Source: Haliotis cracherodii (lineage: Eukaryota). Taken from it: DNA of 64,000 bases. Shown piece after piece: positions 9,235-20,797 of the stretch. The first letter of the stretch is position 1; every line of letters starts with the position of its first letter. A program made the translations under genes and the position numbers. Below the pieces are notes generated by a model. It did no database searches. It saw only the letters and a program-made list of their open reading frames with translations, and was not told the origin of the DNA. Where the stretch lies: the NCBI RefSeq assembly GCF_022045235.1, contig NW_027266297.1:20646001-20710000 (forward strand), written 5' to 3'.

Positions 9235-10358
9235 GGCGGGGTCGCAGTGTCTAGCACGACTTTTGACCTTGACCTTTATTGTCCGTTGACAGCAAACGCT
9301 ATATCTGGGCCGTATGAACGAATATGATTTGGGTTATCAGATGGATGAAATAAATGATTTGTTTGTACGTTTTATTGCCTTTTTCCTTGGTGACTTACAG
9401 AGATATTTCAATTGATGATCTTAAAAAAAAGTCCCTTCATTAAAATTAACTGGCTGGAAGACTATTGAAAATTCATTTAATAATCATAGACAGATTTTAC
9501 TTTGATGACGAGAAGCTAATTCACACCAAGTCTGTTATTGAAATGTACAATATTGTACATAAGTATAAACAATTTTGCTAACTTAAATATTTTCGAAGGT
9601 ATGTACCTTGATACGTTATATTACGTTTCCTTAAGAGCCAAGATGTATTCCCTTGAACAGTATTTATTATAAGATTATTAGTTTCCCTTTGACATTCTAG
9701 CGATTATTTTCATAATATTCTGTACGCTAGTTTTTTTGGTTAATTTACAAAAATGTGTTTTGTATAACGCAGCTTGAAACAGTATTTAAGTTATTTTATG
9801 GTGTCTCAGTTTTATGTGAGATGAAAACCAAAGTGATGCATGTCTCAGATGTTGACAAATAAGTAAACACTCGATCACGGGGATATGACGTCGGCAAACC
9901 AAACACCAACTAAAACTTACGACCACAGGACTCCTATTCGGTGAAGTAATAGTATGATGTACACACAAGCTGCTTCTAACTAATAAACATAAGTCGCATC
10001 AAATAAACAGAGGGTGCCCTAAAAAATATCGTCCACCTCTCGCGCAAACACATGCACAGAAACACATTACCTACCCCGAACTAAACACTAATACCGTTAT
10101 ATTATCGACATGCACCTGAATCTTATAAGGATAGCCCTCATCCAGTTTGATAGAATTAACTTGACACTCACCAATATCACACTCTTTGACGTTTAAGCGT
10201 TAACAAAAGACAGATATTTCAAAATAAGAATATAATTTTATTATGATATAAGAATCCCCGGAAGATGTTGAAGTGTACCAAAATAATACATTATAAAGTG
10301 TTATACATCATGGTATGTTATCCACATATTATATGCAAGTTACCGCCAGTGATGTGAT

Positions 10359-10963
10359 GCTGATATCTCAACTCGCGTGTTGCCATGGTTAATAGGGCGA
10401 GTGATTGATTCCAGGTTGTCGTACACGGCCATACTGATGGAGTTGCCTTGTGTAGGCGACGTCACAACGACGTGGATTGCTCCCGAAGGAGGCGTCAACA
10501 TAAACACGGGACGTTGGGAGGAGGAGACGGTGAGATCAGTCAGGCTCTCGCTGTTAGGTAGCGTATCCATGAAGGTTGCCCCTTACACCCACTGAAAGTG
10601 ACTCCTACCGCCTCGAAGCATGTTTTTTCCCCCGCGAGATAGTCGTAGCCTAGGTCGTAGCAAGCAGCAAGACGTCACATGGTCCTTCCACAAAGGTCGT
10701 TGAACGACCCCAAGGAGATGATGTTTACTTTGGAAAGCACTCGAACACTTCTGATTGGCCTATTGTTTTTCTTTGCGATCTGATGGCGTGGTTGAACCAT
10801 TTTATATAACCATACGCGCAGGTATGGTGCTAAGGTTGTTCCAATTTGTACCATGGTTTAAGTCCACCACTTTGACTTAGGCGTTTTCCAGAGCGCAGGT
10901 GGAGCCACTGACGATGGTGTTGAAGCGGAGAAGAGGTACGCCATACACGTATTTGCCGACCCT
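10359..10963 (-). pseudogene. Degenerate M4 protease copy (3' part), internally deleted and 5'-truncated
   Basis: Nucleotide homology to 18570-19670 (e.g. [43 protein letters not shown]); frameshifts; TAC>TAA stop at about 10878; about 500 bp including HELAH missing at about 10800. Confidence 0.9.
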
Positions 10964-12000: not shown

Positions 12001-12783
12001 TTACTACGTTTGCGTTTTTTTTTGTAGAGTCTACACCCAAATGTTGGGATGTATGTCAGTGTTCTGAAGAACAGGTATTATTTGGTTTCAACACTGAATG
12101 TCTTAATTGTTCTTGAGGGAATTCGGTATGGCAGTATAAGTTTAATGTTTAATCTGTTTCTGTTGACTATTTCAATCTATATTTGGTTTAGAAACATACA
12201 TTGGTTGTAAACAATTTAGACGTAGTTCATACCGTTGATATATGTTATTTGTTATAGTTGTAAGTATGCCAAGAGACCATAGCATTTGCGTATATGCAAT
12301 ACATTGGATATATGGATTATGAATACCATTTATTAATATACAGGACATATGGTGATGTTTGCTTGCTTACTTGCTATCATGTATTTAAAATTTATATCTG
12401 TTACTCCATAGAAGCTTAATATGCTACAACAGTGCAAAACATACTGTAAACGCAATGATCCATTTAGATCATTATGTGAGTAAAAACCAACCTTCTCTGT
12501 GAAACTTACAGTCTTAACAGTCTTAACTAAAAAAAATGTTGGTATAATTGAGTATTAATTGAGTCCGGAAATATAGTCTACGTGTAAACTAGACCGATAA
12601 TAAGCTCTTATAGTCATCTGAAAATGAACTCGTTTCCTAGTTCGTTTGGAGTTCCTAAATCATAGCTAACTTTTAAGACATCATACATATGGCGTAACAC
12701 TGCACACAGCAGGGGCTTATACATGTCGGAGGAAGGATAACTCAACACAATGTAGTAGACACAGGTTTGTGTTTACTTGGAGT

Positions 12784-13560
12784 TTACACGCAGCAGATAT
12801 AGTATTGTGGACAAGTGTGGTGTGTTGGCACTATTTGCGTCTCCTGCAGCCCACATGGCTGTTTACAATTCCCCTGTTCGTGATCACCACATGGTTCTGA
12901 TGGAGGGTTAAGGTGATAACAGAAAATACAAGATCGTGATGAATATTGCCGAATCTGTACGAACTGTTAATTGTGTATTGAAGAAAGAAGTCATAGACAC
13001 CATCTAGTTGCCAGCAACAGTTCTTGATGCTGTCTGTGTCTACATATCATTGTTCTTTTGTTCACCATAGAACGGGCTTATCTATGACTCAAACTTTCAT
13101 ATGACCTTCAGAGGCAACTCGATGTGCAAACTGAATCACACTTATTATAATCTGAAATATGAAAACAGATTATTAAAATAATGACAATGGATTGAAAAGA
13201 AAGGGTACGGGGTGTTGTTGTAGGGAAGGTAAACGTCAATGTTTCCCCTGTGGTGGTTGACGGCTCAGGCTGTTTTTGTACAGCTTGTGCGCCAACGTGT
13301 GTCAGTATCTGATGAGCGGTTCCTGCAGCTACAGCGCCAACACCAGCACCTACAACAGCGGAGCCAAGTTCAGTACTCAAAGCACCACCTACAGCTGATG
13401 TTCCTAAGTCCGCGAAGAGGTCGACGAGTAAGGGAATCAACAGACTTTCGCCAAACTGTCGCTTCTCTGGAACTCGCTCATTCTGAGCTATGTGCCGGGC
13501 GCCCACCAGCACAGGGGCAAGCAAAACGGCAGCACACACAAGCAGAAATCCAACCTTCAT
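12784..13560 (-). CDS. Big-defensin-like precursor; coding exons 13560 to about 13209 and 12896-12784 (about 154 aa)
   Basis: Acceptor ttcttacag|ATTCGGCA ATG(13560). Signal peptide MKVGFLLVCAAVLLAPVLVGA, pro-region ending EKR, hydrophobic Q-FGESLLIPLLVDL...GSAVVGAGVGAVAAG, Thr-rich linker. Separate phase-1 exon after ccttaaccctccatcag| encodes xPCGDHEQGNCKQPCGLQETQIVPTHHTCPQYYICCV* (C-X7-C-X3-C-X13-C-X5-CC). Best in-phase donor C|GTACCC at 13209/13208 is weak. Confidence 0.72.
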
Positions 13561-13899
13561 TGCCGAATCTGTAAGAACAATGGAATGAACATAGTCATGA
13601 CTAACATATAATTTATAGATTATTGACTTTAGGATTATAATTAATAATAACTTTCCGAAATACACTGTACAATCTCCATTTGTTTGGTTGAACAAAAAAT
13701 ACATGCACAAATAAAGTACATATGTTTCGATGTACAACACACGACAGCCTCCATACCCCTTACCCTCAGATATGGTGTCACATGCTAGTGAACTTGACCT
13801 CCAAACTCATTGACGGTAAATATTAGGAAAAGGACGCAAAAATACGCTTAACCTACATAGTCCTTACCCTTAGTATACTTCAACTGGCACTACGACCTT

Positions 13900-13949
13900 T
13901 ACTACTACTGCTAGTACTGCTGCTACTACTACTACAACTACAACAACGG

Positions 13950-13998
<49 letters not shown>

Positions 13999-14000
13999 CA
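13900..14000. repeat. (CTA)n / (TAG)n microsatellite
   Basis: Directly visible. Confidence 0.95.
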
Positions 14001-15907
14001 TTCTTTATCACTACACTAGTTACGGAAAAGACACTCAGCACATCTCGTGTGATATTGTATGTGCCCCATTTCATGTTGGCTTGCAGGCCGGGAGTTGAAA
14101 GGTTTGATATTGTTTTAATTTAGATCTTGCATGGGTAGACATCCAATATGCCATATGTACGTCTCCATACAGAGGCGCGACCTGTGGGATGTCATCGTAA
14201 GAGTTCTCTTAAACTGCATCTAAGTACTGTGCACCAACACGTTAAAAAACAACAACAACTTGCAAGTATTTTTAATCTCCTCCATGTGTCAATACATTAT
14301 GCTATCTATGAAACAGTTCATCATTATCTGTTGGGAGGCCATGGTAATGTTAACATTCTGTAAACTCTAGAAGCTCTAATTTGAACAAAGTTAAAACTGT
14401 CACAGTTCACCAAAATGAATTAGCAATAGCTGAATATATGACTTCATCTGGAAAGTACTATACGAATCTCAGGACATCCTGTCTTTGAATATATTCGATA
14501 ATCATAAATCACGGACAAATTTTAAAATATTATTAATTTTAATTTACTTAATGGGACTTCCCGAAAGGTTTTTAATCCGTCCCATTGCGGTATTTATGTG
14601 CATTATATTAGATAAACATAAGCATGCATGATTGATTAATGTCGCTTTTTCAGAAAGATATATCAAGAGTTATATAACACGATTTACATGTTGGACGCAC
14701 CGGGACCTTCATTGTGGTAAGCGTCGCCCGTTAACATGTAAACCCTCACCACCAATATTGCTAAAACATGTGAATAAATAGCCATGGATCATTGTTTGAG
14801 AGTTTCTATAAACGTTTGCATATGGAATGTTTTCTTGCCGTATCGACGTTAGCAGACTTGTGGCTAGTGTTACTTACACAACATTGATGAGGTGAGTCAA
14901 GGTGATGCTTTATAAATTCTCTTCTCAGTTGATCACCAATCGTAAATGCTTTACAATAATAGCTGTACAGGTATAATATCTCAAAGTCTAACGGTTCGAG
15001 GAATTTTACAGGAGGCAAACACTCTTCCGATCTGAACATTGGTGAACAGGTATTATTGCGGAGGTAATTACAGATGAAGAGTGTATTTTAGTCCACGAAG
15101 AGTGATGAGGATATATGCTTCCTCTGTTTTCAATGGATAGGTCATGTTAGTGCTACATGCAACTTTGGCAGTGCTAAGTTCATTTTGAAACCGCACGCGT
15201 TGCTTCTACAGGTAACATGGTTCCACTTTGAAACAGTGGGTTCCACCATGGACAGTTCAAATCTGTGGCGGAGCAGTATCAGTCCAGCCGTGCGTCCAGT
15301 TAGGTTACGACCATTTCTTTGGAGACAGCAGTACTGCTCCGTGGCGTCACACACTTACTTTTTATGAAACTTGTGGTAGTGGCTGATGCTGTCGGTGGGT
15401 CGGGACATGCTTACCCATTTCGTGAACACCTGGTGTCATCACAGATTTTCAGCGATCAATTCATATAATTTTTCGAGTACTTTTCGCCATATAATCGAGA
15501 CTGGTTATTATCTGTCGTTGATGTTTCATATTTAGAAACGGCTACTCGCAGACTCATCTATAAAGATGACAGGTACTGTCATGGCAGCCATAATGAACGT
15601 TTAGTCCATGCACTTTGTCAAAAATTATGCAGATATATATTCATCGAATGGGATGAGAGTCATATTTATATACTTTCACATGACACGGGTAAACTATTGT
15701 CCATGCTGTAAACTATTTACACATTGAACTAAATAATCTATCAGTTGTACACAAGAGCGCCGTTTTGAATCAATTATGAAGTAACCTTGAAGGATGCTCA
15801 AGTGTTTGTTTCTGTTATATCTTTAGCTCCGTTTCACTGTTTATTTAGGTGACGATGAAAGTAATAAAACGCTTTAGAAGACAAAGTTCCTTCACACAAC
15901 ACAACAT

Positions 15908-18477: not shown

Positions 18478-20797
18478 TCATTCATACGTGATTTGAACGT
18501 TGACGTCAGTGATGTCGTTACCCGATTCAGCAGATACACGCAGGTACAGCGACGGGGACCCAGATGGAAGCTGATATCTCAACTCGCCTGTCGCCATGGC
18601 TAGTGGGGCGGGTGATTCCAAGTTGTCGTACACGGCCATGTTGATGGAGTTGCCTTGTGTAGGTGACGTCACAACGACGCGGGCTGCTCCCGATGGAGGC
18701 GTCAACATAAACACGGGACGATGGGAAGAGGAGACGGTGAGACCAGTCAGGGTCTCGCTGTCAGATAACGTCTCCATAAAGGTCGGCTCCTGACACCCAC
18801 TGAAAGTGATTCCTACCACCTGGAAGGATTTTTTTACCTCCAGATAGTCGTAACCGAGGTCGTAGCAAGCACGCATGACGCCACAAGCGCCTTCCTCAAA
18901 GGTCGTTGATCGAGCCCAGTAGATGACGTTAGCTCTGAGGAAGCATTCGAACGCTTTTCTGATGGGCATTTTGTTGACCTCCACGAGCTGGTAGAAGGCG
19001 TGGTTGAAGATGCCGCTGCTGTAGTGAACGTCGACGTTGTTGTTGTAGTCTCTGGTGTGCTTGAGTGAACCCCCATCTCGAGAAGGATCTTGAAAGTAAC
19101 GCAGGGCCCCATTGCTGCTTTTAAAGATTTCAGCTCCAACGAACCAGTCGTTAGAGCCACGAGCAAACATCTCAGTTGTCTCCCCTGTTATATCCGAGAA
19201 GGCTTCGTTGATACCACCAGACTGATCGTCGTAGATGAGGTTGGAGTTTTGTTCGGTGACACCATGGGCAAGTTCATGAGCAATAACGTCTTGGTTAACC
19301 AGTGGGTAGAAAGTGCTTCGACCATCGCCGAAAGTCAGGCTGCTGCCGTCCCAGAAGGCGTTCTCGTAGTTCCTGCTGTAGTGAACAAAGAGCACTGGCT
19401 TAAAGTTGAGGGGAGTCATCGTGTACCATTCGATAAACATACGGGCTGATTTGGTGCCAAAGTTCATGGCGTCCAGAACGGGGGAGTAAGCACCGTTGAT
19501 GGCGTCGTCATAACCGTTGGCACATGTGTAGGAAGAGGCGGCGCGGTTGTTCCTATTTGTACCCTGGTTTAAGTCCACCACTTTGACGTAGGCGTTTTCC
19601 AGAGTGCATGTGGCGCCACTGACGGTGGTGTTGAGGCACAAAGGAGGAACGCCATAAACGAACTTTCCAACTTTAAGATTTCCACCCTCCCCTTTAGCAG
19701 TATTGCCGCAGGTTGTTGGGCCTGCTGTTGTTGGTGCAGCTGTTGTTGGTCTTGGTGTTGTTGGTGCGGCTGTAGTGGGGCCTGCCGTTGTTGGTGCGGC
19801 TGTTACGGATTCTTGAGTTTGTGGGTCTCCGCCACAACTGTCAGTTGTAGTTTCTGGTTCAGGTGTGGTGTTCTCGCCAGGACACTCATCATCCCCAGGA
19901 GACTGTCTTCGGTGTCGTACAACAGCTTGACGTCTCTCTACTGCTTTGTTCTGGATGTTGTTGAAGGAACGGACAGTGGTAAGGTCACAGGCGTCGATAA
20001 AGTAGCAAGGACGGCTGGGTCTGTTGCCCTTCATGTAAAAGAAGTTGATCTCATAGGTCAGACGAGCCACGCCGTCCTTCTTGACGTAGACGTTCTTCTT
20101 GACGTTGACTTTGGTGACTTGAGACGCTCGGACCCCCTCCTGTGTGAAAGCTACCCTCTTGACGGTGTCATGTGTCTGCTCACAATCCTCAGGGTTGGGA
20201 ATATCTTCCTCCAGTGATGTGAAAAGTTCACCGCTGACGACGCCTGTGTAACCTAGGCTGGGGTTGACGTCGGCTGCCACGCTCCCTCCCACTACTTCCA
20301 GACCACCATAGGTCTGCTGTAGACGTTGCTTGATCTTGCCTCGCACTGTCTTGAGGGATTCCCCGGGGACGATAGCGCTTATGCCGCGCAGCCCCAACTC
20401 TGCACGCAGTTCCTCACGAGTGGCGTGGAAATGAGACCGAAGCTTCAAACGTCGAGTGATGCCAGCAACGTTAAAGCGACGTGCGGCCTCAGTCGTGTAC
20501 ACTGTGAGGGACAGCAGTCCTGAAAAACGAAGTAAAGTAGAATATATCAGATATCTATTTGAAACCTCAAATTGATATTACATGAAACCCGTTTTCTATT
20601 CCTTTCTAATTTTTACTCTGAATGCAATTTGATTGAAATGAATTACGTTGCAATTAATATCTAGTCAGCGAAATTGTACGATGGATGCATTTATTCTGAC
20701 ACGGAAAGTCCCCGTTCCAACACAATGACTGGGAGCATATATGTGTCTTCATATAATGTTACAATTACTTACCCAGCAGGATGATTTGACACTTCAT
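18478..20797 (-). CDS. Peptidase M4 (thermolysin/vibriolysin/LasB-like) preproprotein, copy 1; exons 20797-20773 and 20519-18478
   Basis: Exon 1 ATGAAGTGTCAAATCATCCTGCTGG|GTAAGT; acceptor cgtttttcag|GA; gives signal [23 protein letters not shown]-like ([13 protein letters not shown]) and PepSY-like (YFIDA) propeptide; [37 protein letters not shown] (19278-19264), [23 protein letters not shown]; C-terminal PPC-like domain. TATATAA 20849-20843; ATTAAA 18435-18430. Confidence 0.95.
20703..20713 (-). promoter_or_regulatory. Canonical NF-kappaB site in intron 1 of M4 copy 1
   Basis: GGAAAGTCCCC on + = GGGGACTTTCC on the coding strand; variants in copies 2-4. Confidence 0.4.

What the first reader, a model, noticed from the sequence alone, without database searches (positions are those of the whole stretch)
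12784..13560. Cryptic big-defensin-like gene with extended Gly-zipper N-terminus and an anionic beta-defensin domain
Seen: signal peptide, KR, Gln-initiated hydrophobic region, then a separate phase-1 exon too short for the ORF track with C-X7-C-X3-C-X13-C-X5-CC. Known: mollusc big defensins have a prepro region, dibasic cleavage, often N-terminal pyroGlu, a hydrophobic domain and a separately encoded C-X6-C-X3-C-X13-C-X4-CC domain. Unusual here: longer N-domain with GxxxG repeats (GSAVVGAGVGAVAAG), a Thr/Pro spacer, altered Cys spacing, and more acidic than basic residues in the defensin domain. Possibly a divergent subfamily with a different mechanism.
Basis: partly seen in the sequence, partly recalled or inferred. 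Interest (0 to 1): 0.8.

Follow-up and report, generated by a model that had tools for sequence, protein, structure and literature searches.

The report
Unannotated abalone big-defensin-like secreted peptide gene
A real, spliced and so far unannotated abalone gene encodes a secreted peptide laid out like a "big defensin" (hydrophobic front half, six-cysteine defensin-like back half). It shows no detectable sequence kinship to true big defensins, one of which sits elsewhere in the same genome, so it may be a new lineage-restricted defence-peptide family.

Summary
On the minus strand, an ATG at 13560 opens a 352-nt coding exon: signal peptide, a 13-residue propiece ending in KR, then Gln and a Gly/Ala-rich hydrophobic region followed by a Thr/Pro linker. 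A 312-nt GT..AG intron (13208-12897, phase 1) joins it to a 113-nt terminal exon (12896-12784) with C-x7-C-x3-C-x13-C-x5-CC. Contigs from runs of two organisms carry exactly this junction, so the refutation test "never spliced" fails.

The gene is single-copy. Its only database relative is one unspliced congener ORF, and it is not among annotated Haliotis proteins. The genome is an abalone and carries a canonical big defensin on another contig. That protein matches solved big defensins at E 3e-17, whereas neither exon of the candidate matches them (E>10), and BLASTP and hhalign against the canonical gene are null. The only family signal is a sub-threshold Pfam beta-defensin hit (E 0.0012).

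Structure prediction failed (pLDDT 44.5), so the fold is untested. "GxxxG repeats" is overstated, because there is one strict GxxxG. Anionic big defensins are already known.

Verdict: a real, abalone-restricted gene with big-defensin-like architecture. Family membership is unproven and a defence function is inferred. The scan had not reported this locus or a copy before.

The parts
13561..13568 (-). Short 5' untranslated stretch of the first coding exon. It is preceded by a polypyrimidine-AG acceptor (ttgttcttacAG, AG at 13570-13569), which hints at an upstream non-coding exon.
   Evidence: Sequence. The X1 contig stops matching the genome at 13569 and carries 4 foreign letters beyond it. In organism B, contigs run on unspliced to 13898. 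This is a hint only.
13498..13560 (-). Start codon and signal peptide (aa 1-21, MKVGFLLVCAAVLLAPVLVGA).
   Evidence: It is 100% identical in the congener ORF P0001. The cleavage site after VGA is inferred from the -3/-1 rule.
13459..13497 (-). Basic propiece RHIAQNERVPEKR, ending in a Lys-Arg processing site.
   Evidence: It is identical in P0001. Cleavage is inferred.
13276..13458 (-). Hydrophobic, anionic Gly/Ala-rich N-domain (aa 35-95), starting with Gln.
   Evidence: AlphaFold at low confidence predicts two helices, 41-59 and 65-95. No relatives were found among 1.84 billion representative proteins other than P0001.
13209..13275 (-). Thr/Pro-rich linker (aa 96-117) plus the first base of the split codon.
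   Evidence: It is predicted disordered. Its length varies between species, with net in-frame indels of -6 nt in X2 and +15 nt in X16.
12897..13208 (-). Phase-1 intron, 312 nt, GT..AG.
   Evidence: A joint skipping 312 nt (ends CT..AC on the + strand) is seen in X1. The same joint is seen in X2 with one changed base. A minor intron-retaining form is also present.
12784..12896 (-). Terminal coding exon: six-Cys beta-defensin-like domain C-x7-C-x3-C-x13-C-x5-CC, with stop TAA at 12786-12784.
   Evidence: Pfam Defensin_beta_2 scores E 0.0012 and 19.6 bits, below the 22.2 cut-off. All six Cys codons are unchanged in organisms B and F.
12765..12783 (-). Short 3' untranslated stretch; the apparent transcript end is near 12765.
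   Evidence: RNA-type contigs give no depth below about 12765. The X2 contig carries an adapter directly at 12765. An AGTAAA lies at 12777-12772. This is a hint only.

Best explanation
This is a single-copy gene, so far seen only in abalones (Haliotis), for a secreted two-domain peptide built like a big defensin.

Inferred processing:
- Signal peptidase removes residues 1-21.
- A prohormone-convertase-type enzyme cuts after Lys33-Arg34.
- The new N-terminal Gln may cyclise to pyroglutamate.

Inferred structure of the mature product (about 120 residues):
- a hydrophobic, Gly/Ala-rich helical N-domain;
- a Thr/Pro linker that is probably flexible and may be O-glycosylated;
- a C-terminal three-disulfide beta-defensin-like (trans-defensin) knot encoded by its own phase-1 exon.

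By analogy with big defensins, the most likely role is as a host-defence or microbe-interacting effector. The hydrophobic N-domain would drive self-association or membrane contact, and the Cys domain would supply target specificity. The mature peptide is anionic (about -7) and contains His, so any activity is unlikely to be simple cationic membrane attack. It may depend on pH, metal ions or assembly.

What is shown: the gene model, splicing, expression in several organisms, conservation of frame and of the cysteines, and absence of detectable relatives. What is inferred: processing, fold, ancestry and function.
For: Splicing and expression:
- The exact junction is found in contigs of two organisms, with depths of 93 and 665.
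- Parts of the locus are held by runs of six organism labels in seven studies, and presence differs between runs of one study.

Coding constraint:
- The prepro region is 35/35 identical to P0001, while the mature part varies. Two indels are in frame.
- Linker indels in X2 (-6 nt) and X16 (+15 nt) are net in frame, and all six Cys are kept.

Defensin-like features:
- The Cys array fits the general beta-defensin spacing.
- Pfam Defensin_beta_2 gives E 0.0012.
- The array is absent from 200 shuffles of the window.

Parallels with big defensins:
- The layout and phase-1 intron match the big-defensin gene structure described in PMC7203481.
- Against the canonical abalone big defensin, the Cys residues align with two one-residue indels, sharing CG, GxC, Y and CCV.
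- Shuffle tests give p=0.054 for the C-domain and p=0.028 for signal end, propiece and N-domain together.
- A shared ARH[IV] follows the signal peptide, and an LIP motif sits at the start of the hydrophobic domain.

AlphaFold at low confidence gives helices 41-59 and 65-95 and a disordered linker.
Against: No statistically significant homology to any defensin was found:
- phmmer against the PDB gave nothing at E<=10 for either exon, while the genome's canonical big defensin scores 3e-17.
- BLASTP and hhalign against the canonical gene were null.
- The Pfam hit is below the gathering score.

The fold is untested, because the model had pLDDT 44.5.

The peptide is anionic, unlike most antimicrobial peptides.

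Phase-1 boundaries are the rule for shuffled extracellular modules, so the intron phase is weak evidence of ancestry.

Exon 2 diverges between species about as fast as the intron: 9 differences in 113 nt, with 5 residue changes against 3 silent. This fits either diversifying or relaxed selection.

Tissue, inducibility and activity are unknown.
Confidence: 0.45

Rival explanations
1. It is a secreted cysteine-rich peptide with a non-immune role, such as a reproductive, pheromonal, neuro-endocrine, mucus or shell-matrix protein. On this reading it only resembles big defensins through convergent layout or exon shuffling of a small six-Cys module.
For: There is no significant homology to big defensins even though a canonical one exists in the same genome. 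The peptide is anionic. Its mature part evolves fast, which abalone reproductive proteins also do (established knowledge). Presence differs strongly between runs, suggesting tissue-specific expression. Other beta-defensin-like six-Cys modules on phase-1 exons have been reported on proteases in this genome (earlier notes, unchecked).
Against: The combination of a prepro region with a KR site, N-terminal Gln, a hydrophobic domain and a CC-ended six-Cys exon is the specific big-defensin layout (PMC7203481). A conserved prepro region with a variable mature part is typical of mollusc antimicrobial-peptide genes. No similarity to any other named family was found.
Confidence: 0.33
2. It is a true but extremely diverged paralogue of the abalone big defensin. 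That would make it a family member by descent, with an expanded N-domain, a longer linker and one extra residue in each of two Cys loops.
For: Both genes have the phase-1 intron just before the Cys domain. The Cys residues align with only two single-residue indels and share CG, GxC, Y and CCV. Shuffle tests are marginal at p 0.03-0.05. ARH[IV] after the signal peptide and LIP at the start of the hydrophobic domain also occur in the canonical abalone and horseshoe-crab sequences.
Against: Every standard homology test is non-significant. The mature N-domain alone scores no better than shuffles, p 0.64. The genes lie on different contigs (C34 and C23). The iterative HMM screen of abalone data in PMC7203481 reported only the canonical type.
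Confidence: 0.35
3. It is a young lineage-specific transcript under little constraint: expressed and spliced, but with no important peptide function.
For: There are no relatives outside one congener ORF among 1.84 billion representatives. Exon 2 diverges as fast as the neighbouring intron. It is unannotated in Haliotis proteomes, as shown taken.
Against: The reading frame is kept through at least four independent indel events. All six Cys and the whole prepro region are conserved across species. Contig depth is high in some runs.
Confidence: 0.12

Closest known systems
Canonical gastropod/abalone big defensin (this genome: G000 contig C23, N exon L020:1449-1679(-), C exon L023:4241-4378(-); P0002 'big defensin-like [Haliotis rufescens]'; Table S1 of PMC7203481)
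   Same: Both are secreted precursors with a hydrophobic N-domain on one exon, a phase-1 intron, and a six-Cys domain ending in CCV on the next exon. The Cys residues can be aligned with two one-residue indels. Both have ARH[IV] after the signal peptide and an LIP motif.
   Different: There is no significant sequence similarity. The candidate has C-x7...C-x5-CC against C-x6...C-x4-CC. LIP lies about 77 residues before the first Cys, against 40 in the canonical gene. The linker is Thr/Pro-rich. The net charge is negative. The start codon lies in the same exon as the N-domain. The intron is 312 nt against about 18 kb. The genes are on different contigs.
Bivalve and horseshoe-crab big defensins with solved structures (Cg-BigDef1 6QBL, Cg-BigDef5 8BGK, Tt-BigDef 2RNG)
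   Same: They share the domain order. Possible shared mechanisms are N-domain-driven assembly into nanonets or membrane insertion, with salt-stable activity (PMC7203481). An N-terminal Gln after a dibasic site also occurs in oyster big defensins (own knowledge).
   Different: The canonical abalone protein matches these at E 3e-17 to 4e-9. The candidate matches none. The candidate is anionic and much longer between the propiece and the Cys domain.
Vertebrate beta-defensins (Pfam Defensin_beta_2, PF13841) and non-canonical big defensins / panusins
   Same: The six-Cys array falls within general beta-defensin spacing. There is a phase-1 intron before the Cys exon. The Pfam hit is weak, at E 0.0012.
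   Different: The hit is below Pfam's cut-off (19.6 against 22.2 bits). The candidate is not cationic and carries a long hydrophobic N-domain. Its fold is unverified.
Moricin (lepidopteran alpha-helical antimicrobial peptide, PDB 11tg/11tj moricin-6)
   Same: There is a local match of GVGAV-AAGTAHQILTHV to GLGVISAAGTAHEVYSHV.
   Different: The E-value is only 0.13 against the PDB. There is no Pfam Moricin hit. The taxon is unrelated, and moricins are cationic and lack a Cys domain. The match is probably chance or convergence.

Membership tests
Big defensin | Precursor with signal peptide and a propiece ending in a (di)basic cleavage site | tested here: met
   MKVGFLLVCAAVLLAPVLVGA followed by RHIAQNERVPEKR|Q. 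Read from sequence; the cleavage itself is inferred.
Big defensin | Conserved hydrophobic N-terminal domain homologous to that of other big defensins | tested here: not met
   The domain is hydrophobic (GRAVY 0.92). However, phmmer against the PDB found no big defensin at E<=10. BLASTP was null, hhalign gave probability 0.1% and the shuffle test gave p=0.64 for the mature N-domain. The control P0002 N-domain aligns to 2RNG and 8BGK. Only a short LIP motif is shared.
Big defensin | C-terminal domain with the array C-x6-C-x3-C-x13(14)-C-x4-CC | tested here: not met
   The candidate has C-x7-C-x3-C-x13-C-x5-CC. The canonical gene of the same genome has x6/x3/x13/x4. Other gastropods in Table S1 of PMC7203481 show x5 in the first loop but always x4 in the last.
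Big defensin | Phase-1 intron immediately upstream of the Cys-rich domain | tested here: met
   The junction 13209|12896 is seen in contigs of two organisms, with one base of the split codon in the upstream exon. The canonical gene is also phase 1. The position relative to the first Cys differs by 4 residues.
Big defensin | Detectable sequence homology to the family (profile or pairwise E<1e-3, the criterion used in PMC7203481) | tested here: not met
   Searches were all null. The positive control P0002 gives E 3e-17 to 2RNG. The Pfam PF14862 miss is uninformative, because the canonical abalone protein also misses it.
Big defensin | Beta-defensin fold with C1-C5, C2-C4, C3-C6 disulfides | tested here: inconclusive
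   Single-sequence AlphaFold of the exon gave pLDDT 44.5 and no usable model. No orthologue alignment could be obtained, so no fold search was run.
Big defensin | Salt-stable antimicrobial activity / nanonet formation | not testable with these tools
   This needs peptide synthesis and assays.
Beta-defensin (Pfam PF13841 Defensin_beta_2) | Score at or above Pfam's gathering threshold | tested here: not met
   19.6 bits against a cut-off of 22.2, E 0.0012, residues 6-35 on profile positions 5-30.
Beta-defensin (Pfam PF13841 Defensin_beta_2) | Six-Cys array within C-x4-8-C-x3-5-C-x9-13-C-x4-7-CC (general consensus, own knowledge) | tested here: met
   The spacing is x7/x3/x13/x5. This is the only match in the six-frame translation of the window, and there were none in 200 shuffles.
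Beta-defensin (Pfam PF13841 Defensin_beta_2) | Cationic mature peptide | tested here: not met
   The domain has D+E = 3, K+R = 1, 3 His and pI 5.75.

The most novel reading that the evidence does not exclude
Abalones carry a second peptide family unrelated in sequence to big defensins. It would have re-created the big-defensin design independently by joining a beta-defensin-like six-Cys exon to a new Gly/Ala-rich hydrophobic helical domain through a mucin-like linker. Being strongly anionic and His-containing, it would act by a mechanism other than cationic membrane attack, for example pH- or metal-dependent self-assembly on microbes at mucosal surfaces.
Probability: 0.25. Interest if true: 0.7.

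Novelty: new variant of a known kind. Interest (0 to 1): 0.55.

Why it matters
Big defensins are regarded as the ancestors of vertebrate beta-defensins. Their hydrophobic N-domain is said to have no homologue outside the family (PMC7203481).

A second gene with the same layout but no detectable sequence kinship, sitting beside a canonical big defensin in one genome, has two possible readings. It may be an extreme case of divergence within the family, or it may be an independent assembly of the same design from a defensin-type exon. Either reading bears on how two-domain defensins arise and on what the N-domain is for.

There is also a practical side. Abalones are farmed, and black abalone is endangered by a bacterial disease. 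An unannotated, strongly expressed candidate effector is worth adding to immune-gene sets.

The case also shows that homology-based screens and current annotation miss short two-exon peptide genes.

Tried and rejected
- **Pfam Defensin_big (PF14862) as a membership test: rejected.** The bona fide abalone big defensin (exons and full-length P0002) also gives no Pfam hit. The whole-genome PF14862 scan returned only chance hits.
- **Whole-genome PF13841 scan.** It returned only low-complexity or chance hits and no paralogues.
- **Paralogues.** Exon-wise protein searches of the whole 1.18-Gb genome found only the locus itself. The weak hits L003 and L004 are not Cys domains.
- **Word search with exon 2.** The 36-aa exon was too short. 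Extending it with 4 in-frame intron codes to reach 40 aa found no candidates.
- **Structure prediction.** Exon 2 alone gave pLDDT 44.5. Exon 1 with P0001 gave pLDDT 55. Both are too poor for a fold search, so none was run.
- **The look-up of encoding contigs.** Closed, so the DNA around P0001 could not be read.
- **First degenerate motif for the canonical big defensin C-terminus.** No match, because the local sequence ends CCVS. A second motif (LGPETYGWL) found the gene.
- **The 'beta-defensin' qPCR marker of H. discus hannai in PMC8465606.** It is accession FJ864724, a different gene. Its forward primer encodes VTCDLL, the hallmark of arthropod/mollusc-type defensins (own knowledge).
- **Literature search for a peptide fragment.** No hits.
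- **DNA relationship between the linker and the mucin-like linker of the neighbouring M4 protease.** Not supported.
- **Joined (spliced) protein.** All searches and folds were done exon by exon.

Full report
**What is in the sequence**

On the minus strand an ATG at 13560, with G at -3, opens a 352-nt coding stretch. It encodes, in order:
- a classical signal peptide, MKVGFLLVCAAVLLAPVLVGA;
- a basic 13-residue propiece, RHIAQNERVPEKR, ending in Lys-Arg;
- a 61-residue hydrophobic but acidic Gly/Ala-rich region starting with Gln (QFGESLLIPLLVDLFADLGTSAVGGALSTELGSAVVGAGVGAVAAGTAHQILTHVGAQAVQ; GRAVY 0.92, net charge -4);
- a Thr/Pro linker, KQPEPSTTTGETLTFTFPTTTP.

A GT at 13208-13207 follows one base of a split codon. 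An AG at 12898-12897 precedes a 113-nt terminal exon, 12896-12784. That exon reads PCGDHEQGNCKQPCGLQETQIVPTHHTCPQYYICCV-stop, which is exactly C-x7-C-x3-C-x13-C-x5-CC. It has 3 acidic residues, 1 basic residue and 3 His (pI 5.75).

This is the only such array in the six-frame translation of the window. None appeared in 200 shuffles.

**Is it transcribed and spliced as predicted?**

Yes, as far as contigs can show.
- Nineteen listed runs, carrying six organism labels from seven studies, hold parts of the locus.
- Laid on 12200-14000, run X1 (organism A, 99+% identical, probably the window's species) has a contig joining 12896 directly to 13209. It skips 312 nt whose ends are CT..AC on the plus strand, that is GT..AG on the gene's strand. 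Depth is 93.
- Run X2 (organism B, 95-99% identical) has an 807-nt contig with the same joint at depth 665. One neighbouring base is changed, 13210 G>A, which is a silent change.
- A minor intron-containing form is present in X1 (depth 23) and X2 (depth 3.5). In X3 the assembler followed the intron-containing path.
- The runs are only guessed to be RNA, but a form lacking a GT..AG intron is itself the signature of RNA.

- The X1 contig stops matching the genome at 13569, at the AG of ttgttcttacAG, and carries 4 foreign letters. This suggests a non-coding upstream exon. In organism B, contigs continue unspliced to the microsatellite at 13899.
- RNA-type coverage ends near 12765, about 19 nt after the stop codon.

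**Coding constraint**

The only database relative of exon 1 is P0001. It is a 178-aa ORF called on an unspliced Logan contig of a congener or variant. Against it:
- the signal peptide and propiece are 35/35 identical;
- the mature part carries seven substitutions and two in-frame deletions of 3 and 4 residues.

In the linker, organism B shows deletions summing to 6 nt and organism F insertions summing to 15 nt, both net in frame.

In exon 2, organism F differs at 9 of 113 nt. Three changes are silent and five change residues (P13L, Q17L, Q20R, V22T, I33F). Organism B has H26N. No Cys codon is touched.

A conserved prepro region with a fast-changing mature peptide and a fixed Cys framework is the pattern typical of mollusc effector-peptide genes. 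Two caveats apply:
- Exon 2 diverges about as fast as the adjacent intron, so relaxed constraint cannot be excluded.
- The table of differences was truncated ('30 more not shown').

**Which genome, and does it have a real big defensin?**

Earlier notes of this scan call the genome black abalone. I checked this independently.
- A short degenerate motif for LGPETYGWL found one site on contig C23.
- Its exon (L020:1449-1679, minus strand) is 99% identical to NCBI's 'big defensin-like [Haliotis rufescens]' (P0002). It also matches the abalone entries in Table S1 of Gerdol et al. 2020 (PMC7203481).
- Its Cys exon lies about 18 kb downstream (L023:4241-4378). It reads C-x6-C-x3-C-x13-C-x4-CC and is also entered through a phase-1 intron.

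So the genome is a Haliotis with one canonical big defensin on another contig. The candidate is a different gene.

Because annotated H. rufescens proteins are in the searched collection, the absence of any annotated hit for exon 1 indicates that the candidate is unannotated there. 'Cryptic' is fair.

**Is it a big defensin?**

By architecture it resembles one. By sequence, membership is not shown.
- As a positive control, P0002 matches the solved big defensins 2RNG (E 3e-17), 8BGK (9e-12) and 6QBL (4e-9) across both domains.
- Neither exon of the candidate matches any of them at E<=10.
- BLASTP against the canonical exons finds nothing at E<=100.
- hhalign gives probabilities of 0.1-0.3%.
- The Pfam Defensin_big miss carries no weight, because the canonical abalone protein misses it too.

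The positive signals are weak.
- Pfam Defensin_beta_2 gives E 0.0012 at 19.6 bits, under the 22.2 cut-off.
- A MAFFT alignment puts all six Cys in register with two one-residue indels, sharing CG, GxC, Y and CCV.
- Shuffle tests give p=0.054 for the C-domain and p=0.028 for the segment from signal end through propiece and N-domain. The mature N-domain alone gives p=0.64.
- By eye, ARH[IV] follows the signal peptide in both abalone genes. An LIP motif opens the hydrophobic domain in the candidate, the canonical abalone protein and the horseshoe-crab protein.

The phase-1 intron is shared. However, phase-1 boundaries are usual for mobile extracellular modules, and earlier notes report other beta-defensin-like modules on phase-1 exons of proteases in this genome (unchecked). 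Exon 2 has no detectable similarity to anything else in the genome.

The iterative HMM screen in PMC7203481 reported only the canonical abalone type.

I put descent from a big defensin at roughly one in three.

**Fold**

Single-sequence AlphaFold of exon 2 gave pLDDT 44.5. Exon 1 with P0001 gave pLDDT 55, with helices at 41-59 and 65-95 and a disordered linker. These models are too weak for fold searches. The beta-defensin fold and disulfide pairing remain untested.

No orthologue alignment could be built with the tools available:
- the collections hold no other mollusc genomes.

Everything was done exon by exon, and the junction codon was only read by eye.

**Most likely function**

The best-supported reading (confidence about 0.45) is a secreted, convertase-processed, two-domain host-defence-type peptide that works like a big defensin.
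- A hydrophobic helical N-domain would promote self-association or membrane or microbe contact.
- A flexible, possibly O-glycosylated linker would connect the domains.
- A disulfide-knotted beta-defensin-like domain would confer specificity.

The overall charge of about -7 and five His argue against simple cationic killing. They suggest pH-, metal- or assembly-dependent action.

Rivals:
- a non-immune secreted peptide, for example reproductive, signalling or mucus-associated (0.33);
- a young gene under little constraint (0.12).

An artefact is essentially excluded.

**Novelty and score**

The locus is a real, expressed, unannotated gene. It is single-copy in this genome. No relatives were found beyond one congener ORF among 1.84 billion representative proteins.

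It is best filed as a new variant of a known kind, meaning trans-defensin or big-defensin-like two-domain peptides, and not as a proven family member. Function and fold are open.

The scan had not noted this locus or a copy of it before.

Noticed in passing
window 18478-20502 (-) and 10340-10570 (-): A 674-aa uninterrupted ORF encodes a thermolysin-like (HEXXH: [10 protein letters not shown]) metalloprotease with a mucin-like Thr/Pro linker. A 76-aa ORF about 8 kb away repeats its C-terminal segment (…LTVSSS[QH][12 protein letters not shown]…). The candidate gene lies between the two. blastn found no DNA relationship between the protease linker and the candidate's linker.
   Followed up: partly
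window 12945-12964 vs 13559-13578: A 20-nt stretch spanning the 5' acceptor and the start-codon region (…acagattcggcaat…) is repeated at 95% identity inside the coding intron. The within-window E-value is 0.02. It may be chance or a relic of a small duplication.
   Followed up: no
window 13899-14010: A (CTA/GTA)n-type trinucleotide microsatellite lies just upstream of the gene. All contigs break here.
   Followed up: no
G000 contig C23: L020:1449-1679 (-) and L023:4241-4378 (-): The canonical abalone big defensin gene has a phase-0 acceptor before the N exon, a phase-1 donor after it and an intron of about 18 kb. It is 99% identical to H. rufescens 'big defensin-like'. Pfam's Defensin_big model (PF14862) fails to detect it or the full-length H. 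rufescens protein even at E<=10, although phmmer links it to solved big defensins at E 3e-17.
   Followed up: yes
window 13296-13349 (-), aa 71-88 of exon 1: There is a local resemblance of GVGAV-AAGTAHQILTHV to the lepidopteran helical antimicrobial peptide moricin-6 (GLGVISAAGTAHEVYSHV). The E-value is 0.13 against the PDB and there is no Pfam Moricin hit. It is probably chance or convergence.
   Followed up: partly
window 13239-13574 (+): A 111-aa antisense ORF overlaps coding exon 1. It has no support and is most likely a by-product of the codon composition of the sense strand.
   Followed up: no
whole window: The window contains 202 N letters.
   Followed up: no
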